A stretch of DNA of 64,000 nucleotides, taken from positions 62,001-126,000 of IMG/VR virus record IMGVR_UViG_3300017963_000192; one strand, given 5' to 3'. The notes below the pieces were generated by a model, which was given only the letters and a program-made list of their open reading frames with translations, had not been told where the DNA came from and ran no database searches. Within the stretch, counting starts at the first letter, position 1. Each line of letters opens with the position of its first letter. This document shows positions 8,876 through 61,373 of this stretch, piece by piece. The position numbers were made by a program, and so were the translations under genes.

Positions 8876-8909
8876 ATTAAAATATAAGAAAATACTAATT
8901 AATTTTAAG
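8876..8909 (-). promoter_or_regulatory. Candidate late promoter CTTAAAAT-N14-TTATATTTTAAT (perfect copy)
   Basis: One of 8 fixed-spacing intergenic copies; upstream of the gene starting at 8860. Confidence 0.6.
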
Positions 8910-8937
8910 TAACTTTTTATAATCATATTAATAAATG

Positions 8938-9441
8938 TTATACTACTAATGGTTCGATTGAATTAATATCATTTTCTAATGTATCTAATTCTTCTACTGC
9001 TGAATCATAAAAATCTAATAATGAATTTATAGTATCTAATCTTTTTGATATTTCATCGTGTTCTCTATCATTACTTCTTATATTTCTTAATAAATCTATA
9101 ATTGATATATTTATTTTACCAACCATTTCATTCATTGTATCTGAATAAGTATTTAAATCAATTGCATTTTGTCTAAAAACATTATACTTACCTTCTATTT
9201 GAGATAAATCTACAAATTCATCATAAGTCTCTTTAAAGAAAGAGAGTCTGTTTAATTTTATTGTTAAAAATTCTTTTAATTTTTCATATTTAATTTTTCT
9301 TGCTTTTATAGATGCTCTAGCTATTGTTATCATTTCTATAAAAGTAACTGAACCATCTTTTTGTTTTTCTCCGTCGGTATAATAATAAGATTTTAAGGCT
9401 CTTATATAGTTTTCTACTTTCTCATTTCTAACGTATGCCAT
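8938..9441 (-). CDS. Hypothetical coiled-coil protein
   Basis: 167-aa ORF with an AGGAG RBS, in the operon. Confidence 0.6.
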   Translation of the reverse strand: MAYVRNEKVENYIRALKSYYYTDGEKQKDGSVTFIEMITIARASIKARKIKYEKLKEFLTIKLNRLSFFKETYDEFVDLSQIEGKYNVFRQNAIDLNTYSDTMNEMVGKINISIIDLLRNIRSNDREHDEISKRLDTINSLLDFYDSAVEELDTLENDINSIEPLVV

Positions 9442-9453
9442 AGTACGACTCCT

Positions 9454-10023
9454 TTATGCGATAGTCCCTACTCCAACACCAACCCAAGATACTGGTGGTA
9501 TAGAACCAGTATCTGTCGTATTGACCGTACATGTTTTTATAAAAGTATTTACAGCAGTAGCAATATTCATTGCTGTTTGTTCCCAAGCTTGACCAGATGA
9601 AAATGCGGTAGATAATTGTGTTGTTAATAACCCTAATCCAGTTGGTACAATAGTCCCTACCCCAATACCAGTTAAAGCACCAGCAACAGTAGTAGTTATT
9701 GTTGATGTTGAAACTAAAGTGTTAATACCATTTGCTATAATGTTTCCTGCTGTTGCCCATGATGGGCTTTTAAAAGCACTGACACAAGATGTAATTAGAG
9801 ATGGTAATCCAGTAGTTACTGGATTACCTGTTCCAGTACCTACAGCAACAAATGATGTACCTGGTGGTGGAGGTGTAACTGTGCCAGTAACAGTTGTAGT
9901 TACCATTCCAGTAATAAAAAATGTATTTATAGCTGTAGCGTATAGATTGGCCGCAACAGTCCATTCAGGGGTTTTAAATGCGCCAACTAAATCTGATGAT
10001 AATTTAGAGACTAATAAAGCCAT
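9454..10023 (-). CDS. Thr/Gly-rich virion protein with three internal repeats
   Basis: Three AF..W..A..IA..INT repeats; baseplate context. Confidence 0.55.
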   Translation of the reverse strand: MALLVSKLSSDLVGAFKTPEWTVAANLYATAINTFFITGMVTTTVTGTVTPPPPGTSFVAVGTGTGNPVTTGLPSLITSCVSAFKSPSWATAGNIIANGINTLVSTSTITTTVAGALTGIGVGTIVPTGLGLLTTQLSTAFSSGQAWEQTAMNIATAVNTFIKTCTVNTTDTGSIPPVSWVGVGVGTIA

Positions 10024-10024
10024 A

Positions 10025-10474
10025 TTATATATATATTATCCCTTTAACCCATTTTTTATTTTCATACAGACTAGTAGATTCTCCTTTATCATTTGCTGTA
10101 GGAGTGGTAGGTGTCTCTTTTTTCGTATCTTGTCCTATTGCGTCTTGATTAGCTTGGTATTCTTCTTTAGGCAACGCTGGACAATTAACGAAAAGAGGTG
10201 GAGGAACTTCTATTCTAAAACCAAACACAGGAAAATTAAATAGAGGTGGAAAAGAAAAAGAAGGTATTCCTGGAATAGATAATGTTGGTGTAGTTTTAGT
10301 ATAATCACACGGATCATCAGTTCCGCAATATGTAGAGAAAGGACAAGTGTATGATATGGTAATTGGCGGAGGTAATCCTATTCCTAAAGGAGGAGTTGTT
10401 ATTGTTGGTAATATTGGTATAGCTGGTGCTTCTACTTCTATTACAACAGGCTCGAATATTTGCATTTCAGGCAT
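10025..10474 (-). CDS. Pro-rich hypothetical protein
   Basis: 149-aa ORF, AGGAG RBS, tight packing. Confidence 0.55.
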   Translation of the reverse strand: MPEMQIFEPVVIEVEAPAIPILPTITTPPLGIGLPPPITISYTCPFSTYCGTDDPCDYTKTTPTLSIPGIPSFSFPPLFNFPVFGFRIEVPPPLFVNCPALPKEEYQANQDAIGQDTKKETPTTPTANDKGESTSLYENKKWVKGIIYI

Positions 10475-10476
10475 AA

Positions 10477-17352: not shown

Positions 17353-19800
17353 CTATGCGTGTTGACGAACAAGATGTGTTCTTAATTTATTTGCTATTGT
17401 ATCTGGATCTGAATCTGGTATTTGTAAGTAAATATTTGTAATGTTTCCTGCTTTTGTAACTTCTGTTTTTTCTCCTAATCCCCCTCTAGCACCTTCTTTT
17501 GATGTTACATCAACATTTCTTTTACTGTATACATACATTTCATTGTTTAATAGCTCACCGTCTTCTATTATTGCTGGAACACCACCTTTTATTGTACCAC
17601 CTCCGTGTTTTGTATCCACCCCCCACCCAGTTCTTGTCTTGAAACCTTTTTTACCTTGTTTTAATATATAATCACCAACACCAACCTTTTTAGTGAGGTC
17701 TTCCATGCCTTTTTTTATACTTAATGCACTTTGTTTGAGAGTATTTCCAACATCTATATTTTGTTTAAAACTCTTTAAATCCATATCGGCACCTTTTTTT
17801 GCTTTGTCTATGTAATCAGACCATTTTTCCATAACATTCTTTTCGCTAGAGAACCATTTTGATGGGCTAAATACTCTCATCATTGTTCCAGCCAATTTAA
17901 CAATACCTCCCGCAACCCATAATAGAGTAGGTTTTATAAATTTCCATATAACACCTATAATTGTAAAAACACTCATCATTATTCTCATTATAAGTCTTTG
18001 GATTTGCTCACCCCTTTCTTGAATAGATAGAGTTCTTTCCTGAATTTGTTTCGTTGTCATTAATTTTTTTTGAACTCTTGAGTCTTTTGCTAAAGATTTA
18101 AAATTATCTGTTTGCATCATTGTTATTCTTAATTGTTCGTCATCTACTCCAAACAATTCTTTTAACATTTTATTTTGAGTTATGAAAGCCTCTCCTTCAC
18201 TCATACCTTTAGTAGCATCTCTAACATAGCTCATCATAGATTCCATTTTAGTTGCATATACATCTGTTGTTTTTGTTCCTTCAAGTCCTTTTAAAACACC
18301 TTCTTTTGTAAAACCCATTCCCGTTGCTGTTTTATATCCAAATCGTGATGCAACAATTCCTCTACCAACACTCATTTCCTTTCCTGTTTCTTTTCTATAT
18401 TTCTCTCCATACATTCTTATTCCCATAAAGGCGTGCATACTATAATCCCATTTCTTTCCAAGAGTAGACATACCAGTAACTAATTTAGATAAACTGTCCC
18501 TTAAACTGATGCCCCAACCAGCTAAGTCTTTTTGTTTTTTAGCTAACATGTTTGTTACATTAGCAACTGAACGCATATCAACATTCATCATCCTAGCCTG
18601 TACTGATGCATCTGCAATTGCTTTTGAAAATTGTGTGGTTGATATTCCGGTAATCTTAGCCATTTTATCAGCCATTCCAAACATTGTTGACATATTTCTC
18701 ATTGCTTTTGAAGCATCTCCTGCGGATATCAGCATTTGCTCAAAATATTGTCGTGTTTGTGATGATGATAACTGCATTGTTTGACCTATTCTATACATTT
18801 GTGTTGCCATTGCAGTATTAGCTCTAGTACCTGTTTCTATAAATGCTGATGACCATTCTTCAGCTCTTTTTCTAATTCCCCCAGTAGCTTTCATCATACC
18901 ACTAAATAAATCTGCTCCACCACCTGCTCCAGTTCGTGCTTTAGCAAGAATATCAACTTTTTGTTTAGCAATCCAGTCTCCCAATGACATCATATACATC
19001 TTTACTGCCATTGTACCAAATGTTCCTATAAGATCTCCTAACATACCACCAAAAAGTGGTATTTTTTTTGCTAATCCAGAAAAGAAATCTATTGTTCCTT
19101 GATTAAGTCCTTGCAATCCGCCATCCCAAGCTTTGTGCATTAAATCCATAAATGTTGTAATTACTTTTGTTACCATTTTTGGTAAGAAAGTAATTGTACG
19201 AATAATTGCATCAATTACTAATTTCATTACATTTGCTACTGTGGATACTATTCCACCAACTCCTGGAATATTTTCTCCTAATTTTCCTATAACACTAAGA
19301 GGCCCCTTTCCAGGTGGTCCCCCTGGACCACCTGGACCACCTCCTACAAATTTAGAAATCCTTTCGAGTCTTGCTTTTTTCTTTTCTATTTCGTAAGTCT
19401 TTTCCATAATTCTTAATCTATCTTCTTCTTTTTGTAACTGTTCTTTATTTATTCCATCTATAGTTTTTAATTCTGCTTTTTGCTTTTTTAATTTTGCTAT
19501 GGCTTTGTCCATAGTTATGCCTTCTTCTTTCATTATTCTAGAAATTTGAGATTCAACTTTTAACTGTGCTAGATAAAAGCTTTTAGCCTCACGAGCCATA
19601 TCTTTATCATAGCCCATAATTTTGGCAGCTTTTTCTTTATCCGCTCCAGAAATATCTCCTAAATCTGCCATGTCTCTATGAAGACCATACGTCTCTGCTC
19701 TAGTACCTCTTGCAGTTTCAGAGGCGGCCTCCTTTCGAGATTCCTTTATACCTTCTAAATATTTCAATATGGAATCGGTTAATTTATCTAAATCTGCCAT
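17353..19800 (-). CDS. Tape measure protein
   Basis: 815-aa Ala/Gly/Met-rich helical protein following the tube gene and the frameshifted chaperone pair. Confidence 0.72.
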   Translation of the reverse strand: MADLDKLTDSILKYLEGIKESRKEAASETARGTRAETYGLHRDMADLGDISGADKEKAAKIMGYDKDMAREAKSFYLAQLKVESQISRIMKEEGITMDKAIAKLKKQKAELKTIDGINKEQLQKEEDRLRIMEKTYEIEKKKARLERISKFVGGGPGGPGGPPGKGPLSVIGKLGENIPGVGGIVSTVANVMKLVIDAIIRTITFLPKMVTKVITTFMDLMHKAWDGGLQGLNQGTIDFFSGLAKKIPLFGGMLGDLIGTFGTMAVKMYMMSLGDWIAKQKVDILAKARTGAGGGADLFSGMMKATGGIRKRAEEWSSAFIETGTRANTAMATQMYRIGQTMQLSSSQTRQYFEQMLISAGDASKAMRNMSTMFGMADKMAKITGISTTQFSKAIADASVQARMMNVDMRSVANVTNMLAKKQKDLAGWGISLRDSLSKLVTGMSTLGKKWDYSMHAFMGIRMYGEKYRKETGKEMSVGRGIVASRFGYKTATGMGFTKEGVLKGLEGTKTTDVYATKMESMMSYVRDATKGMSEGEAFITQNKMLKELFGVDDEQLRITMMQTDNFKSLAKDSRVQKKLMTTKQIQERTLSIQERGEQIQRLIMRIMMSVFTIIGVIWKFIKPTLLWVAGGIVKLAGTMMRVFSPSKWFSSEKNVMEKWSDYIDKAKKGADMDLKSFKQNIDVGNTLKQSALSIKKGMEDLTKKVGVGDYILKQGKKGFKTRTGWGVDTKHGGGTIKGGVPAIIEDGELLNNEMYVYSKRNVDVTSKEGARGGLGEKTEVTKAGNITNIYLQIPDSDPDTIANKLRTHLVRQHA

Positions 19801-19809: not shown

Positions 19810-20235
19810 CTATAAGCTTATTGCTGCTCCTGAAAAATTCTCTAACATTTCTTTATATTTTTCTTTAGGAATAAGAACATTTCCATTAGCATCAATAAGT
19901 CCAAGGTTATCATCATAACGAGTATCTGCAACTGCATGACTAACCCTAGTCTTACCATCTTGATAGCTAACGTCAAGAGGTTCTCCTGCTTTCTTCTTTT
20001 TCTCCATCTGCTCTTTCATACTTCGATACTGCTTATATATTTCGGGCTTAATTAATTGACCTATTAATTCAGCTTGTGGTTCTAAAGCTTCTTTCCAATT
20101 GACGTTATGTTGCATTCTTATCATATAAAACGACAAAAACCAATAATGGATGGGTAATCTTTTAACCTCTTCGGAGTATGGATTCCATTTATTGTAAAGA
20201 CAGACGTAGTATCTTACGAAATTCTCGTCACCCAC
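19810..20235 (-). CDS. Tail assembly chaperone, -1 frame extension (gpT-like part of gpGT)
   Basis: This frame stays open upstream to the slippery site at 20280-20286; listed GTG start lacks an obvious RBS. Confidence 0.75.
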   Translation of the reverse strand: MGDENFVRYYVCLYNKWNPYSEEVKRLPIHYWFLSFYMIRMQHNVNWKEALEPQAELIGQLIKPEIYKQYRSMKEQMEKKKKAGEPLDVSYQDGKTRVSHAVADTRYDDNLGLIDANGNVLIPKEKYKEMLENFSGAAISL

Positions 20236-21743: not shown

Positions 21744-23105
21744 TTAAACTGATAATGAGTATGTTCCTTCAGTATATTTATGAACGTATACTGAATAGTA
21801 TGAGTAAAAAATATTTACTGTGTCACGCCTATCAGTTGGCAACGTAACTTTAAGCGTGTCTATTTCTTCTATTATATTATTTGCTAAATATGTTTTAAAA
21901 AGTATTTCCAAATAATTTTGTACAACACCAGTATAATTTGGTCTGTTCTTTATTAAAGAACCTTTAAATGTTCTGTCCATTTGAGCAGCTACATCTTTAG
22001 CAATGTAATCTTTTGCAGTTATTATGTTGGTGTTATTTCTTTCTACTGTAGAATTGTCAGTTGTTAAATCATCAATTACTTTTGTTAATCCACCAGATGG
22101 TGCAAGTAAGTATAGACTACTTGAACCGCAGAGTTGCAATTGATATTCCGAATAGTAGTCATCATAATCTTCATCATATAACTCTATTCCAGGAATTACT
22201 TTATTTAGTAAAGTAGTTGTAGGAGCAATAAATGAATCCCTATAAGCTGCTACTGCGGAAGCTATAAAAGAACCATCAACAACGGCAGTCATTTCTTCAT
22301 TCGTATCTAAATCATTATAGTAATATTTAGCTCTTGTTGCATTTACAAAATTAACCCTTTCATGTTGAAATGATACTGCCTTTCCTCTTAATGATCCTGA
22401 ATCAGCTTCAGTTCCAACTGCTGTTCCAACATCGGCTCCCATATAAGTAACTCTGTACCTAGCATTATCTGGAAGACTCCTTTCTTCAACATGTGCTTTA
22501 AGAAGAGCTTGAACAGCAGAGGACGTTGTTAGGCAACAAACTGTTTGAATATCTCTGTATTTTATTAAATCTAATGCATTACCATAGTCGGTTGTTGTTT
22601 CTGTAGAGGGTACTTGTACAACGGCAATTTTAGGCAGGTTATAGTATCTTAAAGCGAGTTTTGAAATCATAACTAATTGATTGGCAGGAATATCATCTCC
22701 TAAATCTTCTGTTACATCTTCGTAGCTGGTAAATTCTTTATAAACATAATCGCTACTTGGTCTGTCGTATTTATAAGTAACATAATATGTTGCTCCTGGT
22801 GTTACTATACCAGATGAAGTCCATACAATCTGATCTCCAACAAGGTCAAAATGAGTTCCTTCAATATAATCTCCCAATCCTCTTTGTGAACCACATAGTA
22901 TAACAGAATCAATTCCTTCACTAGTATATGCTAAATCATCTGCCAGTCCAACAGCTCCTCTTGTGACTTCTTCGTTAGAAACTTTAACGGTATCACTTGC
23001 AACACCTATAAAACAAGGTGTTCGCTGTGTGGATGTAGGGTTCGCTGAAGCAGGATTAGTTACTTCTTCAATAATTGTTCCAGGTAATCTATATCCTATT
23101 GCCAT
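21744..23105 (-). CDS. Contractile tail sheath protein
   Basis: YRLPGTIIEE start, PCFIG, sheath C-terminal DDLTTD...IITAKDY and final IFYSYYSVY strand. Confidence 0.8.
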   Translation of the reverse strand: MAIGYRLPGTIIEEVTNPASANPTSTQRTPCFIGVASDTVKVSNEEVTRGAVGLADDLAYTSEGIDSVILCGSQRGLGDYIEGTHFDLVGDQIVWTSSGIVTPGATYYVTYKYDRPSSDYVYKEFTSYEDVTEDLGDDIPANQLVMISKLALRYYNLPKIAVVQVPSTETTTDYGNALDLIKYRDIQTVCCLTTSSAVQALLKAHVEERSLPDNARYRVTYMGADVGTAVGTEADSGSLRGKAVSFQHERVNFVNATRAKYYYNDLDTNEEMTAVVDGSFIASAVAAYRDSFIAPTTTLLNKVIPGIELYDEDYDDYYSEYQLQLCGSSSLYLLAPSGGLTKVIDDLTTDNSTVERNNTNIITAKDYIAKDVAAQMDRTFKGSLIKNRPNYTGVVQNYLEILFKTYLANNIIEEIDTLKVTLPTDRRDTVNIFYSYYSVYVHKYTEGTYSLSV

Positions 23106-23146: not shown

Positions 23147-23180
23147 ATTAAAAATTAAGAAAAACCAGACAAATTTTAAG
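23147..23180 (-). promoter_or_regulatory. Candidate late promoter CTTAAAAT-N14-TTAATTTTTAAT
   Basis: Fixed-spacing copy upstream of the sheath gene. Confidence 0.55.
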
Positions 23181-25011: not shown

Positions 25012-26070
25012 CTATATTAATAAATTAAGTATTCTGATAATATCGTAATTATCTCTTAAAAACGCACTCTCAAAATCCCTATGTAAAATTTTAAGTTCTG
25101 GACCGTGAGTGTGTTCTGTTAAGTTTTTTACTTCGTATTTTTGACCTTCAAATTCCCCTTGTAAAAAAACAATAATATCACCTTCGCTAATGTTTGCCTC
25201 TGGTAATGTCCACCATCTCATAGGACGGGTTGTCTTCCATCCATGTTCTGATTGATTTATTTCTATTTTAACTTGATCTCTTGATGCTAAAAATGCTGGT
25301 ATATCAATAGTATGTCTTGGATCAAGTTCTGTTATTTTTACATGATATCTATATCTAAATCTTATAGAATTTAATTGAGGACTTGGACTTGCTGCATATC
25401 TTTTTTGAAATGTAGCTCTAAATTTTATTTGAGTAGTACCTTCTGGAAGACTGAAACCAGTAGCTTTTCTATTACCTAATTCGGTATCGGTATAATCTTC
25501 CATTGTTAACTCTGTCCAATTTCCCCCATCATCTGTAGAATAATAATATTTTATTCTGTTTGTGTCCGCATCTGTCTTATCTTTAGCTAAAAAGAAATCA
25601 ACTTCCTTAAAAGAATCTAAAGTGAAGTTTTCAGTATCCAAATATTCTTCGGTCGAACTCGCAGAACTCATCGAAAATCGATCAGGTTCCCCACTTTGAT
25701 CTTGACCCACTGATATACTATTACTAGAAAAAGAAATATCGCTAGGAGTAGATACAACGATATGATGATAACCATACTTAGTATACCCTTGAAGGTATCC
25801 TGTACCCATGCAAAGAAAGTGATCCCTGTTTGGGCTGCTTTTAATTTCTTTAGTTTCTGCATCTTCTGTTTTACTCCAACAATAACATTTTGTTAAATCA
25901 TCTGGTGCAGTACCATAAAGAGTTATTGCAGAGTTTCTATAGTAAGTACAAGGAGTTCCAGCCGCTCTCATCTTTGCCCTATTTCTGTTTAGGGTTCTTT
26001 CATATAAATGGTATTTATCTATAATGAGTCTAGGATCAACTCTAAATGGTGTAGTCCACCTCATTAACAA
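25012..26070 (-). CDS. Neck / head-closure-like protein with an inserted beta domain
   Basis: KCYCW...CMGTGYLQGY Zn-finger-like start and EGDIIVF...YEV C-terminus; the true start may be ATG 26064. Confidence 0.5.
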   Translation of the reverse strand: MLMRWTTPFRVDPRLIIDKYHLYERTLNRNRAKMRAAGTPCTYYRNSAITLYGTAPDDLTKCYCWSKTEDAETKEIKSSPNRDHFLCMGTGYLQGYTKYGYHHIVVSTPSDISFSSNSISVGQDQSGEPDRFSMSSASSTEEYLDTENFTLDSFKEVDFFLAKDKTDADTNRIKYYYSTDDGGNWTELTMEDYTDTELGNRKATGFSLPEGTTQIKFRATFQKRYAASPSPQLNSIRFRYRYHVKITELDPRHTIDIPAFLASRDQVKIEINQSEHGWKTTRPMRWWTLPEANISEGDIIVFLQGEFEGQKYEVKNLTEHTHGPELKILHRDFESAFLRDNYDIIRILNLLI

Positions 26071-29883: not shown

Positions 29884-29917
29884 AAAAAAAGATAATGAAA
29901 TTATTGCATTTTTTAAG
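29884..29917 (-). promoter_or_regulatory. Degenerate candidate late promoter CTTAAAAA-N14-TTATCTTTTTTT
   Basis: Same spacing as the other copies; upstream of 29835. Confidence 0.4.
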
Positions 29918-45367: not shown

Positions 45368-45401
45368 CTTAAATAATAAAAAGATTTTACTGGATTTTAA
45401 G
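45368..45401 (-). promoter_or_regulatory. Candidate late promoter CTTAAAAT-N14-TTATTATTTAAG
   Basis: Fixed-spacing copy upstream of 45233. Confidence 0.55.
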
Positions 45402-46897: not shown

Positions 46898-48556
46898 CTA
46901 ATTAAAAGTAATACTAAAACTTGTTATTCTCTCACTTCCAGTAAATCCAACTCTAATGTATACTGTATCAGAACAGTTTACAATATTGTTTGTCCCAAAA
47001 GTGCAATCAATATACCCAGAACCAGATCCCACTCTACACCCACCAGAGACAGGGTTTCCGTTATTCCAATCACTTGCGTTATAATCATCTAAACAATCTA
47101 TCCAAACAGTTCCTCCACCGCTAGTTCCATCCCAAGCTTTTGCAAGTTTCATCTCAAGTGAGTTATAACTTCCAACTATATTTATTCTAAAATTAGCACT
47201 TGCTGTACCATCGTGTTCAAACTGTCTCCATAAGAATACTTCAGTATTCATATAAGAACCAGAGTAATCTGGTTGACTTGTTAGGTTTGGGGAATATATC
47301 GTAAAATCTGTAGTATTTCTCTCACATCCACCACATCTAAAAACGGCATCCATTATCCCCACATCAACAGTAGAATCCCAGGATTTCGCACCGCCCGAAT
47401 CAAAGTTTGCTGTAGAAGGACATCTCCAATCTTCATAATCAAATCTTTCTATTAATCTGGTACTAGAATTTGTTCTTGTATTTACAAGTATGTTTGCATT
47501 GCTAGATGGAACCCATGAACCATTTGTCCAATCTATAGGTCTTGCATTTATATTTGCAGTTGTTGTTACAGAACAAAAATTGGATGCATTAATAGCCCAA
47601 TTCGTCTTATTATAAGAATCGTTTGCATCATCATATGCATAAGTCCATCCAGTTAAATCCGAGCCAGATAAATCTAATGTTGGTAATCCATATTCACTAC
47701 CTTCAATATCTACTTGATTAAGAGGATATGTATGATAATTTAAATTATCAATATCAGTAATATCAACCGTAAATTGACTTCCAGTTGTATAATACTCAAC
47801 GCCAGACAAAAATCTTGTTACAACACTTCCAGCAGTTTCTACTATAGTAACACCGGACAATGTTGCAATAGTTGGATTAGGATCATAAAAAGTAGCTGTT
47901 TGTGTTTTGGTATAATCAATGTCATTATGATGAATCATTTCTACCGTAATTCTTCCACCACTTGATATTATTAAACTTATAGATATTGTTATAGTAACAA
48001 TACCTTTATACTTGATATAATCCGTATCCCAGGAAGTTACTTGTATTCTAATGTTATCTGAAGTATCATCATAATTTCCTGTTATTGCCGGAGTTGTTTT
48101 AGTAGCTACTTTTGTAATCTCATCAGCATCATAAACATTCACCTCTAAGGTGGAAGTTAAACTATCAAAAAGACATTGATTTGTTGTTGTATAACTCCAA
48201 GTCGTTGATTGCGTTGCAGGATGAAGTGTTCCAGCCACCCAATCTCCTTTACTAAAAGGAGTTCCTTCAGATGCTGGATTTGATATATACCTATTTGTAG
48301 TTGATATACTACCCACAGAGCAATTGTTATTACCATCACTTGTATTAAAATGAGAAACGAAGTCTACTTCTGGAGCAAATATTGTAACCTCATTAGGACC
48401 TGTTTTCATTGCATTATGACCTGTCCCAACAATGTTGACGGTTGTAATGCCCGTACCTATTACAACTCCTTCATCTTCAAAAGTAATACCTGTACTAGTA
48501 GGGGTTTGTTGTCCTCTTTTTCGTTCAAGAAGAATTTTAGGTTCTCTAAATCCCAT
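46898..48556 (-). CDS. Beta-rich virion / fibre-associated protein
   Basis: 552 aa, Thr/Ser/Gly/Asn-rich; EDEG..I...TTVNIVG motif. Confidence 0.55.
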   Translation of the reverse strand: MGFREPKILLERKRGQQTPTSTGITFEDEGVVIGTGITTVNIVGTGHNAMKTGPNEVTIFAPEVDFVSHFNTSDGNNNCSVGSISTTNRYISNPASEGTPFSKGDWVAGTLHPATQSTTWSYTTTNQCLFDSLTSTLEVNVYDADEITKVATKTTPAITGNYDDTSDNIRIQVTSWDTDYIKYKGIVTITISISLIISSGGRITVEMIHHNDIDYTKTQTATFYDPNPTIATLSGVTIVETAGSVVTRFLSGVEYYTTGSQFTVDITDIDNLNYHTYPLNQVDIEGSEYGLPTLDLSGSDLTGWTYAYDDANDSYNKTNWAINASNFCSVTTTANINARPIDWTNGSWVPSSNANILVNTRTNSSTRLIERFDYEDWRCPSTANFDSGGAKSWDSTVDVGIMDAVFRCGGCERNTTDFTIYSPNLTSQPDYSGSYMNTEVFLWRQFEHDGTASANFRINIVGSYNSLEMKLAKAWDGTSGGGTVWIDCLDDYNASDWNNGNPVSGGCRVGSGSGYIDCTFGTNNIVNCSDTVYIRVGFTGSERITSFSITFN

Positions 48557-48563
48557 TATTTTC

Positions 48564-48935
48564 CTATTTTGACATTAATGCTAATTCAACAATAGAGTCT
48601 TCAATAAAGTATATGCCAATCTGTCTAACCGAATCTTGAATATATAAAACATCTCCTGCTTTGAGGGTTTTAGCTCCATCTATAGAACTTGATAAATCCA
48701 TACCCTTTTTGTTAAATGCTATTCTTACTGAACCATCTCCAATATTATCAACTAATAAATACTCAAATGATTGTGTTATTGTAGTCTCAAAATAGGTGAG
48801 ACTACCATCCATAAAATCATATTCGTAAGAAGTTGCTGTAGTGCCACTTCTTACCAAGAATATTGTTTTCTGTACTTGATGTTCACTACTTGGAGAGGGT
48901 ATACCATCTCCTATGACTATCTTTTTTCTAGGCAT
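48564..48935 (-). CDS. Hypothetical virion protein
   Basis: 123-aa ORF heading the operon. Confidence 0.5.
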   Translation of the reverse strand: MPRKKIVIGDGIPSPSSEHQVQKTIFLVRSGTTATSYEYDFMDGSLTYFETTITQSFEYLLVDNIGDGSVRIAFNKKGMDLSSSIDGAKTLKAGDVLYIQDSVRQIGIYFIEDSIVELALMSK

Positions 48936-48960: not shown

Positions 48961-48994
48961 ATTAAAATATAAATGTATTTTGAGTAATTTTAAG
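48961..48994 (-). promoter_or_regulatory. Candidate late promoter CTTAAAAT-N14-TTATATTTTAAT (perfect copy)
   Basis: Upstream of 48935. Confidence 0.6.
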
Positions 48995-49864: not shown

Positions 49865-50221
49865 CTAGCACATGTTATTCCATCTTCTGACTGCATCAAT
49901 TTCTTCTTCTGTCTTTGGACCACTTGCCTTACAAGTTTCGCATTTAACTTGTTTATATTTAGTATCATGATATACATATATAAGAACATGTGTTGATTTA
50001 CAATATGGACAAGGTTTTAAATTCAAGTCTATATCCCAAAACATAATATCTTCAGTATAGGGGATAAAACAGGATGTACTACCATGTCTCCCTACATATC
50101 TGTATATCCATCCACTAGGAACTCTTATAAACGTTCCTTCATAATTATTCTTTTTTTGGATGTTTACTGACTCTCCAATTTTCATTTTAAATAATCTTTT
50201 TGCTAATTTATTTTCTTTCAT
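49865..50221 (-). CDS. Protein with a C-terminal Lar-like (restriction alleviation) Zn finger
   Basis: LKPCPYC...CETCKASGP...AVRRWN. Confidence 0.65.
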   Translation of the reverse strand: MKENKLAKRLFKMKIGESVNIQKKNNYEGTFIRVPSGWIYRYVGRHGSTSCFIPYTEDIMFWDIDLNLKPCPYCKSTHVLIYVYHDTKYKQVKCETCKASGPKTEEEIDAVRRWNNMC

Positions 50222-50571
50222 ATCTCTTTTTTAAGACTTTCTAAAGCCTCCTCCAAATTATCGTGTATGTCTATTAATTTATCAAAATTAGTAATAGCCA
50301 ACACTTGTTTACATAGTTCGTTTGGGTTGAACACTTTAAAGGCTAATCCCTCCTTATCTAGTTTTCTTTTATTTATAATAAACACTTTTAATGCAGAACT
50401 ACCTATGAATTCCACATCTTCAAGATCAACCAAAATATTGGCTTTTTTATGTTTTTTCATAATTTCTTCAAGAACATTCTCAAAACTGTCCGATAAATCT
50501 AAATCCATTTTTCCAGACAATTCTACAACAATGATGTTTTCCTCTACTTCTTGATATTCTACACTACCCAT
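50218..50571 (-). CDS. STAS anti-sigma factor antagonist
   Basis: LSGKMD, ILVDLEDVEFIGSSAL. Confidence 0.88.
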   Translation of the reverse strand: MGSVEYQEVEENIIVVELSGKMDLDLSDSFENVLEEIMKKHKKANILVDLEDVEFIGSSALKVFIINKRKLDKEGLAFKVFNPNELCKQVLAITNFDKLIDIHDNLEEALESLKKEI

Positions 50572-51303: not shown

Positions 51304-51657
51304 TTATTTCTCCTTTGATTTAATAAATTCTACCGCCTCTTCTTCATTATTACAAACTTTTATAACCTCATCAATACCTGTAATGTTAAACACTTTTTTA
51401 CAAGTAGCATTTGCATCAAATAATACAAGTTTCAGCTTATTGCAAATCAATTCTTTATATGCAATTATAAAAACTTTTATAGCATAACTATTTAAATATC
51501 CTACATCGAATAAATCCATTAGTATGTGACAATTAGGATTATCTTCTATAGCCTCATTTACCATATCTTCAAAGTCTTTATCTAATGTTATATCAATATT
51601 TCCAGATGGTGTCAATATAATTATATCGTCTCCTATCTTTTTATATGCTGATTTCAT
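51304..51657 (-). CDS. STAS anti-sigma factor antagonist
   Basis: PSGNID, ILMDLFDVGYLNSYAI. Confidence 0.85.
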   Translation of the reverse strand: MKSAYKKIGDDIIILTPSGNIDITLDKDFEDMVNEAIEDNPNCHILMDLFDVGYLNSYAIKVFIIAYKELICNKLKLVLFDANATCKKVFNITGIDEVIKVCNNEEEAVEFIKSKEK

Positions 51658-52687: not shown

Positions 52688-52725
52688 TTTTTATTGGTGG
52701 GGGTTTCCCCCCACCAAAGTATTAA

Positions 52726-53898
52726 TTAAACTCTAAAAAGAGTAAGATGTATAATCTTGTTATTAAATTCAACAGCTTCACCGATTAATTTGGTAGAACT
52801 CTTGTCTTTTTCATCTTTCTCTTCCCTAAATTCAATTATCTTGTAAGGCTGCCCTTGAGCCTCACCATAGATAACCTTCTCCTTAAACTTCTTCAAAAGT
52901 TCCTTTCCCAGAAGCCCTTTAACTTTTTTAGGATTAAACTCAAACAAGTTGTTTTCTTCTTTTTTCATAAAAGAACTGCCCTCTTTCTCAACAACATCGT
53001 CCTTAACAGACTGCCAAGAATCTGGAAGATTATAAATATCCATACCCTTAACTTTGTTTTCTGTGATAAAGATAGCTCCAACTTGGTTTTCGATAGGTGG
53101 GATTTTCTTCATAGCTTCTCTAATGCTTGAAGACAAATCATCTAATGTTGCTGCTAAATCATCAGATGCCGGAACGTCTCTTGTAGGCTCATCTGGTTCT
53201 GATGAAAGTGAATCCATACTTGCAAACATCATATCTACTCCATTATCAATACTGTCATTAAGATTGACAGATGAAGATGTAGTAAATGTACTAGATGCTT
53301 CTGATGTAACACCACTAGTTTCATCAGACACATTAGATGCATATACATTTTGACTTTCTACACCACGACTTTTTAAACCACTTTTCTTGGTTAATCGCCT
53401 ATTGCTCAGTTTAACTTGAGCATTTTGTGGTTCTCCATACACAGAACAGCTATAAAGATTAACACTATTCCAGGTACTGCCTTGATTAGAAAGATCAATA
53501 TCATATGGGGTTCTACCACCATATTTCATATCTGCTCCTTTTTGTATCCCTTTGCTTTGGTGAATACATCTAACAGCAACTCGCTGCCCTTTTCCAGCCA
53601 ATACAATGTGACCGTGAATAGCAGCCCTTTCTTGAGTTTTACCTCTGAAGATTTCACCTCTACTGATAAGTAGAGGTACATCCTCATTGTTTTTGACATA
53701 AACGTAGTCGATCATACCTGTGTCTTCTACTTTTACATCCTGTGCTTCTGCAAACGTGATATAATCACGTTTCTCGTCAACTTCCCTTTTAACAGGTACG
53801 ATGACGTTTAGAGATTCTTCACTCATTCTCCAAGGCTCGTCTAGAACGAATCCATCCTTTTCCTCTATGACAGCCCCAATAAATTTTTGAATCTTCAT
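52726..53898 (-). CDS. ARPP-1 / DUF6569-like protein
   Basis: VKNNEDVPLLISRGEIFRGKTQERA...VAVRCIH; AAGGAGG RBS. Confidence 0.6.
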   Translation of the reverse strand: MKIQKFIGAVIEEKDGFVLDEPWRMSEESLNVIVPVKREVDEKRDYITFAEAQDVKVEDTGMIDYVYVKNNEDVPLLISRGEIFRGKTQERAAIHGHIVLAGKGQRVAVRCIHQSKGIQKGADMKYGGRTPYDIDLSNQGSTWNSVNLYSCSVYGEPQNAQVKLSNRRLTKKSGLKSRGVESQNVYASNVSDETSGVTSEASSTFTTSSSVNLNDSIDNGVDMMFASMDSLSSEPDEPTRDVPASDDLAATLDDLSSSIREAMKKIPPIENQVGAIFITENKVKGMDIYNLPDSWQSVKDDVVEKEGSSFMKKEENNLFEFNPKKVKGLLGKELLKKFKEKVIYGEAQGQPYKIIEFREEKDEKDKSSTKLIGEAVEFNNKIIHLTLFRV

Positions 53899-55201: not shown

Positions 55202-55232
55202 AAAAAAGCGGAAGACAGATAAAGCCTCCCGC
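55202..55232 (-). terminator. Rho-independent terminator
   Basis: GCGGGAGGC...GTCTTCCGC followed by T6. Confidence 0.65.
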
Positions 55233-55272: not shown

Positions 55273-55485
55273 TTACTTTTTAAATTTATTGTAATCTTCT
55301 GCTAACTTAAATATTACGTCAACCCTATTGTCGTGCTTTTGTAACTCATAACTAACAATATTTCCGTATTGATTTATGTCATCAGCAATTTTATCCACTT
55401 CTGTAAGAGTTCCTTCGAATTTTGAATGCAATTGAACAACTGCTGTTTTTGAATTAGGAAAGAAATGTTTCATAATATTCTCCAT
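55273..55485 (-). CDS. Small hypothetical protein
   Basis: 70-aa ORF between a candidate promoter and a terminator; the true start may be ATG 55473. Confidence 0.5.
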   Translation of the reverse strand: MENIMKHFFPNSKTAVVQLHSKFEGTLTEVDKIADDINQYGNIVSYELQKHDNRVDVIFKLAEDYNKFKK

Positions 55486-55497: not shown

Positions 55498-55531
55498 TTA
55501 AAATAATAAAAGGTTTTTGCTAAATGTTAAG
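55498..55531 (-). promoter_or_regulatory. Degenerate candidate late promoter CTTAACAT-N14-TTATTATTTTAA
   Basis: Same spacing as the other copies. Confidence 0.45.
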
Positions 55532-55670: not shown

Positions 55671-55699
55671 TTGAATTTTTACTATGATTGTGTTATATT
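55671..55699 (+). promoter_or_regulatory. Sigma70-type promoter TTGAAT-N17-TATATT with TG extension
   Basis: Upstream of the single plus-strand gene, which has an AAGGAGG RBS. Confidence 0.55.
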
Positions 55700-55782: not shown

Positions 55783-56520
55783 ATGAACACTGTAAGTGGT
55801 TCAAAAGAAGGGTTGAGGTTAAAACAGTATTTCAAGTACAATAACCTTCTGTCAGAAATCACAAAGGTAAAAGAGGATTTACCCGATTTGGAAACTAAAA
55901 GAATTAAGCTTTTAGGAGATTTATACACCCTTCACGAAAAGAGTGGTTGGTTAATAGGAGAACTATTAATTCAACAAAGAAAAATTTTAAAGGATCGTTA
56001 CCAAGATTGGCAACAATATCAAAGAGAAAACGGTGGTAATGGTGAGTCCTACACCCAAATCAAATCAATTTATGATTGGGCAGAAGCCAATAAAGATGAA
56101 TTGGGATTTGGCGAAAGAACTGCAAGAAGATACATAAGATTGCGAGAGGAAACTACACCAGAAATAGGAAATCAATTAGGGATAAAAAAAGCAGAGATTA
56201 TAAAAAAAGCTCCAAAGCCTATTCAACAAGAATTGAGGAAAATGGCTGTAAAAGAAAACTGGAGTACTCCTAAAGTAGAACAGGTTGTCAACATCGTCAA
56301 GAACAAAAAATCTAAAAACGTATCTATTAAGGATATAGATTTTGATAATGTAATAAAAGCCAACCTTCCAAAGATAAGTGTTAAACTTCATCCAAGGAAC
56401 AAGAGTCAAATAATTATTGAAGTTGCTCCAAAATACAGAGATTCCCTCAATAATTTACTCCAAGAAAGATATATCCCTAAATTGAAACATTCTTTACACC
56501 TCTCCATGCATTCCCATTAA
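55783..56520 (+). CDS. Putative DNA-binding protein (DUF3102/HTH-like)
   Basis: Strong RBS; IGELLI...LGFGERTARRYIRL motif; own promoter and terminator. Confidence 0.6.
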   Translation: MNTVSGSKEGLRLKQYFKYNNLLSEITKVKEDLPDLETKRIKLLGDLYTLHEKSGWLIGELLIQQRKILKDRYQDWQQYQRENGGNGESYTQIKSIYDWAEANKDELGFGERTARRYIRLREETTPEIGNQLGIKKAEIIKKAPKPIQQELRKMAVKENWSTPKVEQVVNIVKNKKSKNVSIKDIDFDNVIKANLPKISVKLHPRNKSQIIIEVAPKYRDSLNNLLQERYIPKLKHSLHLSMHSH

Positions 56521-58037: not shown

Positions 58038-58048
58038 TTTTTACTCCT

Positions 58049-58468: not shown

Positions 58469-58505
58469 TTTTTACTCCTTATTTTTATACTAAAAATATA
58501 TCACA

Positions 58506-59210: not shown

Positions 59211-59252
59211 TTTTAAATCTCCTGAATTATAGTATAGTAGGTTTCATTTCAT

Positions 59253-59603
59253 TTACACATAATCCATACAATAAATATCTAAATCGGCAGTAGCGACTCC
59301 GGCCTCCACTTTTGCAATAAGTATATAATCAATCTCTCTGTCTGGATCAAATTCTATCAAATCTTTACTAGAAAAAGAATCTCCATCATCAATTCCTATA
59401 CCTACAAAATTAGTAGGGTCATTAGTAAACTCCATCATTTCTTCTTGAGAGATAAAGTTGATTTCAACCTTTTTACCGCAACCATTTTTTACATAGATAT
59501 TTTTAGGAGTCGAATTTCCTATCTTACATGTTTCCACATATTGATAACCCGTACTCGTTGTATTCAACTCTGCTATAGTAACGGTGACTTTTTTGTTCTT
59601 CAC
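59253..59603 (-). CDS. Small virion (head decoration-like) protein
   Basis: GTG start with AGGAGG RBS; beta-rich. Confidence 0.5.
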   Translation of the reverse strand: MKNKKVTVTIAELNTTSTGYQYVETCKIGNSTPKNIYVKNGCGKKVEINFISQEEMMEFTNDPTNFVGIGIDDGDSFSSKDLIEFDPDREIDYILIAKVEAGVATADLDIYCMDYV

Positions 59604-59614
59604 TGAATTTCCTC

Positions 59615-60529
59615 CTACATTTTACTTCTTTTATCGTATAGTGCAGTCCTTATTTCACTATTTTGAACAACGTTAGGATGAGTTATAATAAAATCAAGTT
59701 CCTCAACATTCAAGTCTTCTGTTAAAGCCCATTGAGTAAACTCAATAGAGGTCATCCCAAGATGAGCACTTTCTGGAACACTTGAAAGTCTGAGCTTTTC
59801 CAATTTACTTAAAACAGTAGGTCTAATCCTTGGTGTTGTAGGCTGTAAAGGAGGAGGATTATGTGGAAGATTAACCTGTTGTTGGTTTTGGGCTTGCTGT
59901 GCTTGTTGCGATACTTGTGCTTGACTGATTTTCATTTGCTCAATTCTTCTCTTATTATCAAGCTCTATCTTTTTAGCTTCAAGATATTCTTCTGGAGTAA
60001 GTCTTTGCAACATTGATTTTCCTAAATCACCAGCCAACATGTTCCTTAAATCCCTAGACTTTTTAAGATCATCAAGAGTAGCATATCTTAATAAGTCCTC
60101 ACTCTTTCCCCTCAACACGTTCATGTCTAAATCAGATATTACAACGTGTCCGTTTGAATTGTTTTTAACATAAAATGTTTCGTTACCGTACTCATCCATA
60201 AAAACTTTGGCTTTAGCTGTTACTTCAGTAACACTTTTAGAGGATTCTCCGAGTTCTCTCTCTATCTCCTCTATTTTAGACTTGGTATCACTTTGAGAAG
60301 TATCTACAGCAACTGGTTGTTGTGGAACTTCTCCGCTAACATTCCCCTGAACTTGTTGTGTTGTTTGAAATTCAGGAGTAATTGTTTGACTTGTTTGAGT
60401 CGCTTGTAGATTTTGGGCATCAGTTGGAACAACGTAACCGTTAACTCCATCTTGAGTGATGTCCCTACCAACTAACTCACTTTGTTTTTGAGCCTTTCTC
60501 ATTAGCTCTTCTTGTAAATTTGGATTCAT
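59615..60529 (-). CDS. Gln-rich hypothetical protein
   Basis: 304-aa ORF with an AAGGAG RBS downstream of a candidate late promoter. Confidence 0.55.
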   Translation of the reverse strand: MNPNLQEELMRKAQKQSELVGRDITQDGVNGYVVPTDAQNLQATQTSQTITPEFQTTQQVQGNVSGEVPQQPVAVDTSQSDTKSKIEEIERELGESSKSVTEVTAKAKVFMDEYGNETFYVKNNSNGHVVISDLDMNVLRGKSEDLLRYATLDDLKKSRDLRNMLAGDLGKSMLQRLTPEEYLEAKKIELDNKRRIEQMKISQAQVSQQAQQAQNQQQVNLPHNPPPLQPTTPRIRPTVLSKLEKLRLSSVPESAHLGMTSIEFTQWALTEDLNVEELDFIITHPNVVQNSEIRTALYDKRSKM

Positions 60530-60558
60530 TTCATATCTCCTTAATATTATATTAATAC

Positions 60559-60592
60559 ATTAAAATATAACTATAATCAGTAAAATTTTAAG
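60559..60592 (-). promoter_or_regulatory. Candidate late promoter CTTAAAAT-N14-TTATATTTTAAT (perfect copy)
   Basis: Upstream of 60529. Confidence 0.6.
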
Positions 60593-61304
60593 TATTCTTT
60601 GACTTATTTATTTCTAATAAATCAGGATTGCTTTCAAGAAAATGTACAACTTCTTCTATAGAAAAAGGCTTTTTTTTATACAATTCACCATATATCATTT
60701 TAGCAAGTACATAATCCTCCTCATAATCAACTGTCAATCGAGGATATCCTAAAGGGCTTTGTAATCCAGCATTATAAAATTCAACATTGAATTTATCTCT
60801 ATTATTTTTAATGTAAGTTGTTACATGTTCTCTATCAGATTTTTTCGTTACTTCATTGTATGTTCTTTGAATGGCTTCACTTTTGAATATTTCTATGCCT
60901 GTTCCTATAGGAAGTCCAACCATAGCAAGTAAATCAAATTTTTTTTCAATTTCTCTTTTAATGGCAAAAGAACCGTAATTAACGTCAATAAAAGGGTTAT
61001 CCCCCGTTATTCTTGCTATGTATTTACTAGGATATTCCTCTGAAATTATGTAAAATCTCTCTAAAACATCCTCTATAGCACCTACAAAAACATTACATCT
61101 CATTTCAAATGCTAAATCTATTATAGGTTTATTAGAACCACAGTAACTTGTAGCTACAAACACCTCATCTACGTTCTCAAAAGCTTGAACTCTTTCAATT
61201 ACGTGTGCTAACAAAGGTTTTCCAGCCAAATCAAGCATAGCTTTATCTGGTAGCCTATTAGATTTCATTCTTGCCTGTATAACAGCTATTACGTTTTTTC
61301 TCAT
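60588..61304 (-). CDS. SpsF-like acylneuraminate/sugar cytidylyltransferase
   Basis: IQARMKSNRLPDKAM, RITGDNP, DREHVT, RLTVDYEED. Confidence 0.88.
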   Translation of the reverse strand: MRKNVIAVIQARMKSNRLPDKAMLDLAGKPLLAHVIERVQAFENVDEVFVATSYCGSNKPIIDLAFEMRCNVFVGAIEDVLERFYIISEEYPSKYIARITGDNPFIDVNYGSFAIKREIEKKFDLLAMVGLPIGTGIEIFKSEAIQRTYNEVTKKSDREHVTTYIKNNRDKFNVEFYNAGLQSPLGYPRLTVDYEEDYVLAKMIYGELYKKKPFSIEEVVHFLESNPDLLEINKSKNT

Positions 61305-61339
61305 ACGGTAGGAATATTCTTCATCTCATTTTTAATATT

Positions 61340-61373
61340 ATAAAATGATAATGAATTTAGCAAAAATTTTAAG
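61340..61373 (-). promoter_or_regulatory. Candidate late promoter CTTAAAAT-N14-TTATCATTTTAT
   Basis: Upstream of 61304. Confidence 0.5.

What the first reader, a model, noticed from the sequence alone, without database searches (positions are those of the whole stretch)
8876..61373. Bipartite fixed-spacing motif CTTAAAAT-N14-TTATATTTTAAT in 8 intergenic gaps: candidate phage late promoter
Seen on the coding strand at 8876-8909, 48961-48994 and 60559-60592 (both boxes perfect), 23147-23180, 45368-45401 and 61340-61373 (first box perfect), and 29884-29917 and 55498-55531 (degenerate). The 14-nt spacers are unrelated in sequence. Most copies lie upstream of virion operons (baseplate, sheath, fibre genes). 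The motif is not a sigma70 consensus. Inference: it is recognised by a phage-encoded or alternative host sigma factor, which may tie in with the phage's anti-anti-sigma proteins.
Basis: partly seen in the sequence, partly recalled or inferred. Interest (0 to 1): 0.62.

Follow-up and report, generated by a model that had tools for sequence, protein, structure and literature searches.

The report
Phage late-gene promoter motif
A two-box DNA motif with fixed spacing sits in front of the tail, baseplate and DNA-packaging genes of an uncultured 218-kb marine-sediment phage and its relatives, and is most likely the late promoter read by a sigma factor the phage encodes: a familiar strategy with a new consensus sequence.

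Summary
All eight copies are at the stated coordinates, on the minus (coding) strand, in intergenic gaps 13-135 nt upstream of start codons. Across the 217,703-bp phage genome there are 16 intergenic copies, all pointing the same way as the gene downstream. Only the 14-nt spacing is enriched.

The motif is conserved upstream of orthologous genes (tail sheath, terminase and others) in four or more related metagenomic phages, and the spacers differ between them.

The invariant bases read as a sigma-70-family promoter. The -35 box is CTTAAA. The -10 box has invariant T-12, A-11 and T-7. The two hexamers are 17 nt apart. A separate class (TTGACw, then TG-TATATT) marks host-type early promoters.

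The phage encodes two paralogous sigma-70-family proteins, both outside the window, and no detectable RNA polymerase. Sigma1 folds as a sigma factor and is modelled onto the beta-prime clamp helices.

The best reading is a late promoter that depends on a phage sigma, as in SPO1. No RNA data exist, so the transcription start, the timing and the choice of sigma are inferred. The suggested link to the phage's STAS proteins has no support. This is a new member of a known kind, of moderate interest.

The parts
8876..8909 (-). Class L promoter-like site, both boxes perfect; 16 nt upstream of ORF 8414-8860
   Evidence: Variant sites stand upstream of the orthologues in G001 and G003.
6952..8860 (-). 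Downstream genes: a 148-aa ORF with a weak sheath-initiator match (8414-8860) and the baseplate wedge subunit (6952-8412)
   Evidence: PHROG phrog_6 baseplate wedge, E 2e-27. Pfam Sheath_initiator E 0.006, below the cut-off.
23147..23180 (-). Class L site 42 nt upstream of the tail sheath gene
   Evidence: The same boxes with different spacers stand upstream of the sheath orthologues in G001 (73% aa identity) and G003 (63%).
21744..23105 (-). Tail sheath gene (453 aa)
   Evidence: PHROG tail sheath families, E 1e-18. tblastn hits to annotated sheath genes.
29884..29917 (-).
   Evidence: A site is conserved upstream of the G001 orthologue.
45368..45401 (-). Class L site 135 nt upstream of ORF 43191-45233 (680 aa, resembles virion structural proteins)
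   Evidence: PHROG hits include a virion structural protein. This is the longest leader of the set.
48961..48994 (-). Class L site, both boxes perfect; 26 nt upstream of ORF 48564-48935 (123 aa), which is followed by ORF 46898-48556 (552 aa)
   Evidence: In G001 a site precedes the gene just upstream of the orthologue.
55498..55531 (-). Class L site (first box CTTAACAT) 13 nt upstream of a 70-aa ORF (55273-55485)
   Evidence: Also scored as TTAACA-16-TATTAT, 10 of 12, by the generic scan.
55208..55232 (-). Terminator-like hairpin with a T run, closing the short unit of promoter, 70-aa ORF and terminator
   Evidence: 9 pairs, 6 of them G-C.
60559..60592 (-). Class L site, both boxes perfect; 30 nt upstream of ORF 59615-60529 (304 aa, unknown). 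The first box overlaps the stop codon of the upstream gene.
   Evidence: Sites are conserved upstream of the orthologues in G001 and G002.
61340..61373 (-). Class L site 36 nt upstream of the cytidylyltransferase gene 60588-61304
   Evidence: Pfam CTP_transf_3, E 7e-29.
55671..55699 (+). Contrast class: a host-type promoter-like site (TTGAAT, 17 nt, TG-extended TATATT). It points away from the class L site in the same gap, towards the only plus-strand gene (55783-56520).
   Evidence: Same architecture as the TTGACw / TG-TATATT sites elsewhere in the genome.
62061..62089 (-). Contrast class: a host-type promoter-like site (TTGACA, 17 nt, TAAATT) upstream of ORF 61481-61915

Best explanation
The motif is the late-gene promoter of this phage lineage. 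I call it class L. Its consensus is c-CTTAAAAttt, then TTATnTTTTaA starting 14 nt after the first 8-mer.

Read as a sigma-70-family promoter, CTTAAA is the -35 hexamer. T24-A25-t-n-w-T29 is the -10 hexamer, so the invariant bases fall at -12, -11 and -7. The hexamers are 17 nt apart. Transcription should start about 2 nt after the motif ends.

Host core RNA polymerase is directed to the motif by a phage-encoded sigma-70-family protein. The most likely one is sigma1 (260 aa, genome 195043-195825, outside the window). Sigma1 is made from the replication-gene block, which carries host-type TTGACw / TG-TATATT promoters. Its paralogue sigma2 (335 aa, genome 7955-8962) is the alternative reader.

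Shown: the motif, its placement, its conservation, the sigma genes, and the sigma fold.

Inferred: that transcription starts there, that it is late, and which sigma reads it.
For: 1. Placement. There are 16 intergenic sites in the genome, each co-oriented with the next gene and 13-135 nt from its start codon. They stand in front of the sheath, baseplate wedge and terminase large subunit genes, among others. None lies in the small-gene blocks at 0-20 kb and 200-217 kb, and only one (genome 166268) lies inside the plus-strand replication block.

2. Fixed spacing. Only a 14-nt spacer is enriched.

3. Conservation of bases. C1 T2 T3 A4 A5, T23 T24 A25 and T29 T30 T31 are invariant in 16 of 16 sites. 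G001 has the same core in 11 of 11 sites, with C instead of T at position 23. Invariance at -12, -11 and -7 is the pattern of sigma-70-family -10 elements (established knowledge).

4. Phylogenetic footprint. The boxes are kept and the spacers differ upstream of orthologues of the sheath gene, ORF 29320, ORF 59615, the 677-aa ORF at genome 128179, and the terminase (or its operon). This holds in G001, G002, G003, L160 and L162.

5. A separate host-type class. TTGACw followed by TG-TATATT is present in this genome, G001 and L160. The lineage therefore uses two promoter classes.

6. Sigma1 is a sigma factor.
- Pfam Sigma70_r2 scores above its cut-off; TIGR02937 scores 40 bits.
- It has 26 metagenomic relatives.
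- The AlphaFold model has mean pLDDT 81, and all top PDB fold matches are sigma factors at probability 1.0.
- The best solved-structure sequence hit is FliA, E 1e-5.
- The complex model with B. subtilis beta-prime residues 1-420 scores ipSAE 0.81. The best of 3 controls scores 0.00. This mark was reached by 51 of 78 solved complexes and 2 of 108 mismatched pairs. The runs share at least 46% of their contacts, and the partner pLDDT is at least 70. Sigma1 residues 81-101 sit on beta-prime 248-287, the clamp helices. Because sigma-RNAP complexes have been solved, this pass shows likeness, not binding.

7. Synteny. The order helicase, sigma1, small ORF, terminase (or its operon) is conserved. A class L site follows sigma1 in G000, G001 and L162.

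8. No phage RNA polymerase was found by Pfam families.
Against: - There is no transcript evidence of any kind. Only sediment and seawater DNA runs hold this sequence.
- The -10 half is nearly the same hexamer (TATATT) as in the host-type promoters of this phage, so host primary sigma plus a factor acting at -35 is not excluded.
- Two sigma paralogues exist in G000, G001 and G002, but I found only one phage-specific motif class, so the assignment to sigma1 is a guess.
- One site precedes a cytidylyltransferase and several precede unknown genes, so 'late = virion' holds only in part.
- Some leaders would be very short (11-14 nt).
- The motif has partial dyad symmetry, TTAAA ... TTTAA, which a dimeric DNA-binding protein could also use.
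- The T7-type RNAP search had no positive control.
Confidence: 0.6

Rival explanations
1. Host primary sigma with a phage factor at -35 (sigma appropriation, as at T4 middle promoters). The -10 half is read by the host's own sigma A. CTTAAAAT is the box of a phage activator that replaces the -35 contact.
For: The -10 hexamer of class L (TATATT, or TAtnwT) equals the -10 of this phage's host-type promoters. Hexamer spacing is 16-17 nt. The generic sigma-70 scan scores the sites 9-10 of 12.
Against: Class L lacks the TG extension that the phage's host-type promoters carry, because positions -15 and -14 are not conserved. Conservation continues past the hexamer (T30, T31, A32/A33 and T23), which is unusual for primary-sigma promoters. 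The phage encodes two full sigma-like proteins whose presence this model leaves unexplained. MotA and AsiA families were not searched, so this rival is not excluded.
Confidence: 0.15
2. A host alternative sigma reads the motif, for example a flagellar sigma-28 type, or a sigma released from its anti-sigma by the phage's STAS proteins.
For: The first box with its 3' flank (TAAAAttt) matches 7 of 8 positions of the sigma-28 -35 consensus TAAAGTTT. The relative G002 carries at least six canonical sigma-28-type promoters. Five STAS ORFs have no phage kinase partner.
Against: The -10 half is not GCCGATAA. The critical CG is TT or CT in every site, and the best register is 1 nt shorter. G002's sigma-28-type sites precede genes with no homologues in this genome. 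The host is unknown, so nothing could be tested against its sigma set.
Confidence: 0.1
3. The motif is not a promoter but an operator. A dimeric phage regulator binds the partly palindromic arms (TTAAA ... TTTAA) to repress or time genes that are driven from elsewhere.
For: Positions 2-6 are complementary to positions 33-29 in most sites of both genomes.
Against: The strongest conservation (C1, and T23 T24 A25) is asymmetric. The half-site centres are about 25 bp apart, which is not a whole number of helical turns. Every site has one orientation relative to the gene. The gaps hold no other promoter-like signal, and several of them are only 58-77 nt long.
Confidence: 0.05
4. The motif is the promoter of an undetected, highly divergent phage RNA polymerase.
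For: This is a jumbo phage with many ORFs of unknown function. The T7-type RNAP family search had no positive control.
Against: There are no hits to the multisubunit RNAP domains, although the controls matched in all 14 reference genomes. A two-box layout with an unconserved spacer and a sigma-like -10 is typical of sigma holoenzymes, not of single-subunit polymerases (established knowledge).
Confidence: 0.05

Closest known systems
Bacillus phage SPO1 sigma cascade (gp28 for middle genes, gp34 for late genes)
   Same: A large virulent myovirus with no polymerase of its own. Early genes use host sigma A promoters. Later genes use two-box promoters read by small phage-encoded sigma-70-family proteins on host core polymerase (PMC13401047). 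Here too there are two phage sigmas, a host-type class and a phage-specific class.
   Different: There is no detectable sequence relation: tblastn of sigma1 against 50,697 phage records finds nothing. The consensus differs. As I recall, SPO1's boxes are AGGAGA / TTTnTTT and CGTTAGA / GATATT; this is from memory, not tested. I found only one phage-specific class here. Timing is not measured.
Sigma-28 (FliA / SigD) promoters, TAAAGTTT-n11-GCCGATAA
   Same: The -35 core TAAA is shared, and 7 of 8 positions match over TAAAAttt. The overall length is similar. Sigma1's best solved-structure sequence match is FliA. Sigma1 is the size of a group-3 sigma (260 aa) and has a helical middle domain.
   Different: The -10 box lacks the defining GCCGA. 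The register is 1 nt shorter. The FliA family model scores far below its cut-off (21.5 against 189.6 bits).
T4 middle promoters (MotA box plus sigma-70 -10, with AsiA)
   Same: A host-like -10 is combined with a non-host upstream box at the -35 position.
   Different: T4 uses an activator and a sigma remodeller, not a new sigma. This phage encodes complete sigma-like proteins. MotA and AsiA homologues were not searched.
T4-type late promoters (gp55/gp33; single TATAAATA box)
   Same: A late, AT-rich -10 element in front of virion genes of a large myovirus.
   Different: T4 late promoters have no -35 element, and gp55 is a minimal sigma. Here the upstream box is invariant, and sigma1 has a C-terminal helix-turn-helix domain.

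Membership tests
Sigma-70-family two-box promoter | Two conserved boxes separated by an unconserved spacer of fixed length | tested here: met
   Only the 14-nt spacer is enriched. Spacer columns carry little information.
Sigma-70-family two-box promoter | A -10 element with conserved T-12, A-11 and T-7 | tested here: met
   T24, A25 and T29 are invariant in 16/16 (G000) and 11/11 (G001) sites. The positions between them vary.
Sigma-70-family two-box promoter | Lies upstream of genes and points the same way as them | tested here: met
   13 of 14 sites with at most 1 mismatch are intergenic and co-oriented.
Sigma-70-family two-box promoter | Transcription starts 5-9 nt downstream of the -10 element and depends on a sigma | not testable with these tools
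   No RNA run holds this DNA. The phage is uncultured.
Host primary-sigma promoter (TTGACA-17-TATAAT) | -35 hexamer TTGACA | tested here: not met
   The hexamer is CTTAAA or TTAAAA, with no G or C at the consensus positions in any site. True TTGACw sites form a separate class.
Host primary-sigma promoter (TTGACA-17-TATAAT) | -10 hexamer TATAAT, TG-extended in this phage's own host-type sites | tested here: inconclusive
   The hexamer TATATT/TAtnwT matches 5 of 6 positions, but there is no TG at -15/-14.
Sigma-28 / FliA promoter | -35 box TAAAGTTT | tested here: inconclusive
   TAAAAttt matches 7 of 8. The G is A in 15 of 16 sites.
Sigma-28 / FliA promoter | -10 box GCCGATAA, 11 nt after the -35 box | tested here: not met
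   The box is TTATnT (G000) or CTATnw (G001), and its best register is n10.
T4-type late promoter | A single -10 box with no -35 element | tested here: not met
   The upstream box is invariant and at a fixed distance.
Sigma-70-family sigma factor (sigma1, genome 195043-195825) | Region 2 (core binding and -10 recognition) | tested here: met
   Pfam Sigma70_r2 scores 27.4-29.4 bits against a cut-off of 24. Modelled on the beta-prime clamp helices with ipSAE 0.81; the best control scored 0.00.
Sigma-70-family sigma factor (sigma1, genome 195043-195825) | Region 4 helix-turn-helix (-35 recognition) | tested here: inconclusive
   Sigma70_r4 scores 12 bits, below its cut-off. TIGR02937 spans residues 58-228 at 40 bits against a cut-off of 42.9. 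The model has helices at 185-232, and whole-length fold matches are to sigma factors.
Partner-switching module (anti-anti-sigma STAS + anti-sigma kinase + PP2C phosphatase) | STAS protein | tested here: met
   Five ORFs score above the Pfam cut-off.
Partner-switching module (anti-anti-sigma STAS + anti-sigma kinase + PP2C phosphatase) | Anti-sigma serine kinase (HATPase_c_2) and SpoIIE-type phosphatase | tested here: not met
   No match in the genome at E up to 1, although the controls matched. The record is 88% complete.

The most novel reading that the evidence does not exclude
The phage's sigma pair descends from the flagellar sigma-28 family and has split its specificity. One branch keeps TAAA at -35 but has moved to a TTAT-type -10; this is class L. 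A relative (G002) still carries canonical sigma-28-type promoters on its accessory genes. The five kinase-less STAS proteins made from the late operons would then act on the host's partner-switching anti-sigma factors, to remodel the host sigma pool in favour of the phage sigmas. This would be a phage takeover of a bacterial partner-switching circuit together with an orthogonal sigma/promoter pair.
Probability: 0.1. Interest if true: 0.7.

Novelty: new member of a known kind. Interest (0 to 1): 0.45.

Why it matters
The motif gives a transcription map (host-type early class against phage-specific late class) for a lineage of uncultured sediment jumbo phages that has no cultured relative. That map helps to mark operons and likely virion genes among ORFs that are mostly unannotatable.

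The pair of a small, divergent sigma factor and a sharply defined 34-bp promoter could serve as an orthogonal expression module.

The resemblance of the -35 box to sigma-28 promoters offers a testable case of how phage sigmas diverge in specificity.

It does not change what is known about how phages time their genes.

Tried and rejected
- Cultured relatives. Megablast of 6 kb against 50,697 phage records found nothing. tblastn of sigma1 found nothing. The sheath protein has only 24-35% matches. No annotation could be borrowed.
- RNA evidence. Only DNA runs from sediment and seawater hold the stretch.
- Exact-pattern scan of IMG/VR (17 fixed bases). It returned 88 stretches, each with a single match, and no new multi-copy contig. 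The pattern was too strict to trace the family, so protein-anchored relatives were used instead.
- Generic sigma-70 scan of the window. It found 101 and 84 sites, against 100.7 and 92.5 in shuffles. It is uninformative in DNA of 31% GC.
- Second phage-specific promoter class, which two sigmas would predict. Dyad counting found none in G000.
- G002's sigma-28-type class. It precedes genes with no G000 homologues, so it is not the counterpart of class L.
- Two same-strand matches inside coding regions (genome 49364 and 46656). The first lies in a conserved stretch of an MptE-like/DUF115 gene, and the same place matches in G001. I treat it as a by-product of coding sequence, not as a counted site. 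The second is undecided.
- Phage RNA polymerase families, and anti-sigma kinase and phosphatase families: no hits.
- Bacterial genomes searched with the sigma1 profile. One distant hit (24% identity) in an uncultured Clostridia MAG. This is not enough to name a host.
- Which sigma reads the motif. The regions upstream of the sigma2 genes show no clear promoter, so this stays unresolved.

Full report
**Setting.** The window is bases 62001-126000 of a single 217,703-bp virus record. It has 31% G+C, is estimated 88% complete, and has linear ends. Nearly all window genes are on the minus strand. Identifiable products include tail sheath, baseplate wedge and proteins that resemble virion structural proteins. 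The phage has no close cultured relative. Its DNA is found only in sediment and seawater metagenomes. Strong Shine-Dalgarno sequences are the most enriched words upstream of genes.

**Observation.** All eight sites exist at the stated coordinates, on the minus (coding) strand.
- The stated pattern with up to 3 mismatches gives 7 matches, against 0.33 expected.
- The two degenerate copies are recovered at 4 mismatches and by a position matrix.
- No other minus-strand copy exists in the window.
- The one plus-strand match (39385-39418) is antisense within a gene.

Across the genome there are 16 intergenic copies, every one co-oriented with the next gene. Two of them sit on the plus strand in front of plus-strand genes. 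Thirteen of the 14 sites with at most 1 mismatch lie in the 6.6% of the genome that is intergenic. The spacing is truly fixed: a 14-nt spacer gives 24 sites (17 intergenic), other spacers give 4-13, and Markov simulations give 5.5. Unsupervised dyad counting finds this motif first.

**Anatomy.** In the 16 sites, C1 T2 T3 A4 A5, T23 T24 A25 and T29 T30 T31 never vary. A6, A7, T8, T9, T20, T26, A32 and A33 are preferred. The base before C1 is C or A. The spacer is otherwise free.

Read as a sigma-70-family promoter:
- CTTAAA occupies the -35 hexamer.
- T24-A25-t-n-w-T29 occupies the -10 hexamer, 17 nt away.
- The invariant bases then fall at -12, -11 and -7, the positions that sigma-70-family proteins read most stringently (established knowledge).
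- The predicted start is about 2 nt after the motif, which gives leaders of about 11 to 133 nt.

The generic scan scores these sites as weak sigma-70 matches, 9-10 of 12. So 'not sigma70' is correct for the -35 half only.

**A second, host-type class.** Intergenic gaps elsewhere carry TTGACw, about 14-15 nt, then TG-TATATT. These sites are at genome 126132, 130926, 147583, near 191000, 208727, 212614 and near 23300, and in the window at 55671-55699 (plus strand) and 62061-62089 (minus strand). They head the replication block and the small-gene blocks. In the complete relative G001, dyad counting returns exactly these two classes.

**Conservation.** Relatives were found through the sheath and sigma proteins:
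- G001: 252,876 bp, terminal repeats, complete.
- G002: 161 kb.
- G003 and G004: fragments.
- L160 and L162: contigs that carry sigma1 relatives of 43% and 65% identity.

Class L boxes, with unrelated spacers, stand upstream of orthologues of these genes:
- the sheath gene, in G001 and G003;
- ORF 29320-29835, in G001;
- ORF 59615-60529, in G001 and G002;
- the 677-aa ORF at genome 128179, in G001 and G002;
- the 148-aa ORF at 8414-8860, as variants in G001 and G003;
- the terminase large subunit or its operon, in G001, L162 and L160.

G001 uses C instead of T at position 23 in 10 of 11 sites. This is the behaviour of a functional cis element, not of chance AT-rich matches.

**Candidate reader.** The genome holds no detectable RNA polymerase (the T7-type search had no positive control). 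It holds two paralogous sigma-70-family ORFs outside the window.

Sigma1 (genome 195043-195825):
- It passes the Pfam region-2 cut-off.
- It has 26 metagenomic relatives.
- Its model has mean pLDDT 81, and the best PDB fold matches are all sigma factors.
- It is nearest by sequence to FliA and SigH among solved structures.
- In a controlled complex prediction it sits on the beta-prime clamp helices of B. subtilis RpoC. The score was 0.81 and the best of 3 controls 0.00. The mark was reached by 51 of 78 solved complexes and 2 of 108 mismatched pairs. The runs share at least 46% of their contacts, and the partner pLDDT is at least 70. Sigma-polymerase complexes are solved, so this shows likeness, not binding.

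Sigma2 (genome 7955-8962) scores weakly as a sigma. It matches sigma1 orthologues at 26-27% identity over about 240 residues.

Both paralogues occur in G000, G001 and G002, and G001 has a third sigma-like ORF.

Sigma1 lies at the end of the replication module, in the order RecA, primase, DnaB, tubulin, helicase, sigma1, followed by a small ORF and then the terminase or its operon. A class L site stands between sigma1 and the terminase.

**Mechanism proposed.**
1. Host holoenzyme transcribes the blocks that carry TTGACw promoters, including sigma1.
2. The phage sigma then takes host core polymerase to class L sites in front of the virion, packaging and some sugar-metabolism genes.

Shown: steps up to and including the existence and fold of the sigmas. 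Inferred: the transcription start, the late timing and the sigma1 assignment. Confidence is about 0.85 that this is a promoter, and about 0.6 for the whole statement.

**Rivals.**
- Host sigma A plus a phage factor at -35. It is supported by the shared TATATT hexamer. It is weakened by the missing TG extension, by conservation beyond the hexamer, and by the presence of phage sigmas.
- A host alternative sigma. TAAAAttt matches 7 of 8 positions of the sigma-28 -35 box, but the -10 box is not GCCGATAA.
- An operator for a dimeric regulator. There is partial dyad symmetry, but the strongest conservation is asymmetric.
- A hidden phage polymerase.

**The STAS idea.** Five STAS-domain ORFs exist, four of them in the window. 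The genome has no anti-sigma kinase and no PP2C phosphatase. Nothing connects the STAS ORFs to the motif other than that they lie in operons it may drive.

**Verdict.** This is a real, conserved, promoter-like element. It is most likely a late promoter that depends on a phage sigma, comparable in logic to SPO1 (PMC13401047), with a new consensus in an uncharacterised jumbo-phage lineage. It is a new member of a known kind, of moderate interest.

Noticed in passing
window 61400-61473 (-): A tRNA with anticodon CUA (reads the amber codon UAG; ARAGORN labels it tRNA-Pyl) lies directly upstream of the class L site at 61340-61373. TAG still ends 55 of 283 ORFs, so there is no genome-wide recoding. 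A few TAG-terminated ORFs run in frame into the next ORF (for example 19810-20235 into 17353-19800, and 26077-26976 into 25012-26070), which may be chance.
   Followed up: partly
window 32294-32638, 32806-33393, 50218-50571, 51304-51657 (all -); also genome 10900-11223: Five STAS-domain (SpoIIAA-like, anti-anti-sigma type) ORFs in one phage, with no anti-sigma kinase or SpoIIE-type phosphatase in the genome. Their function is unknown.
   Followed up: partly
G002 (loci L063-L064), about 130-158 kb, minus strand: The relative G002 carries at least six canonical sigma-28-type promoters (CTAAAGTTTT, about 12 nt, GCCGATA), each about 22 nt upstream of a gene. They lie in an 80-gene block that has almost no homologues in this genome.
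   Followed up: partly
genome 191615-192694 (+), outside the window (L018:11615-12694): A tubulin/FtsZ-family gene (Pfam Tubulin, E 3e-16) sits two genes upstream of sigma1. It is conserved in that position in all relatives examined.
   Followed up: no
window 1626-3707, 35424-37988, 40716-41870, 42261-43064 (all -); genome 196753-199770 (+): The genome has many selfish elements. Inteins with LAGLIDADG domains interrupt a radical-SAM protein, a virion structural protein and the terminase large subunit. Two free-standing homing endonuclease genes are also present.
   Followed up: no
window 4500-5567, 5644-6885, 60588-61304 (-); genome 48588-49589 (-): Sugar-modification genes: a nucleotide-sugar epimerase, a glycosyltransferase-like ORF (weak match), a CMP-sugar-type cytidylyltransferase and an MptE-like/DUF115 protein. 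This set recalls nonulosonic-acid glycosylation islands (from memory, not tested). The cytidylyltransferase has its own class L site.
   Followed up: no
genome 30589-31389 (-), outside the window (L012:10589-11389): A DUF481 protein is preceded by a class L site. As I recall, DUF481 is a family of predicted outer-membrane beta-barrels, which would hint at a diderm host; this conflicts with nothing found here but was not tested.
   Followed up: no
window 52694-52717 and 62085-62131: Strong palindromic hairpins flanked by T and A runs, likely bidirectional terminators. They lie after the 390-aa ORF 52726-53898 (Pfam ARPP-1 domain) and next to the host-type promoter-like site at 62061-62089.
   Followed up: no
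genome 16970-24000 (-), outside the window: Intergenic gaps here contain tRNA-like sequences, apparently a tRNA gene array. This was seen only in the printed upstream regions and was not scanned with ARAGORN.
   Followed up: no
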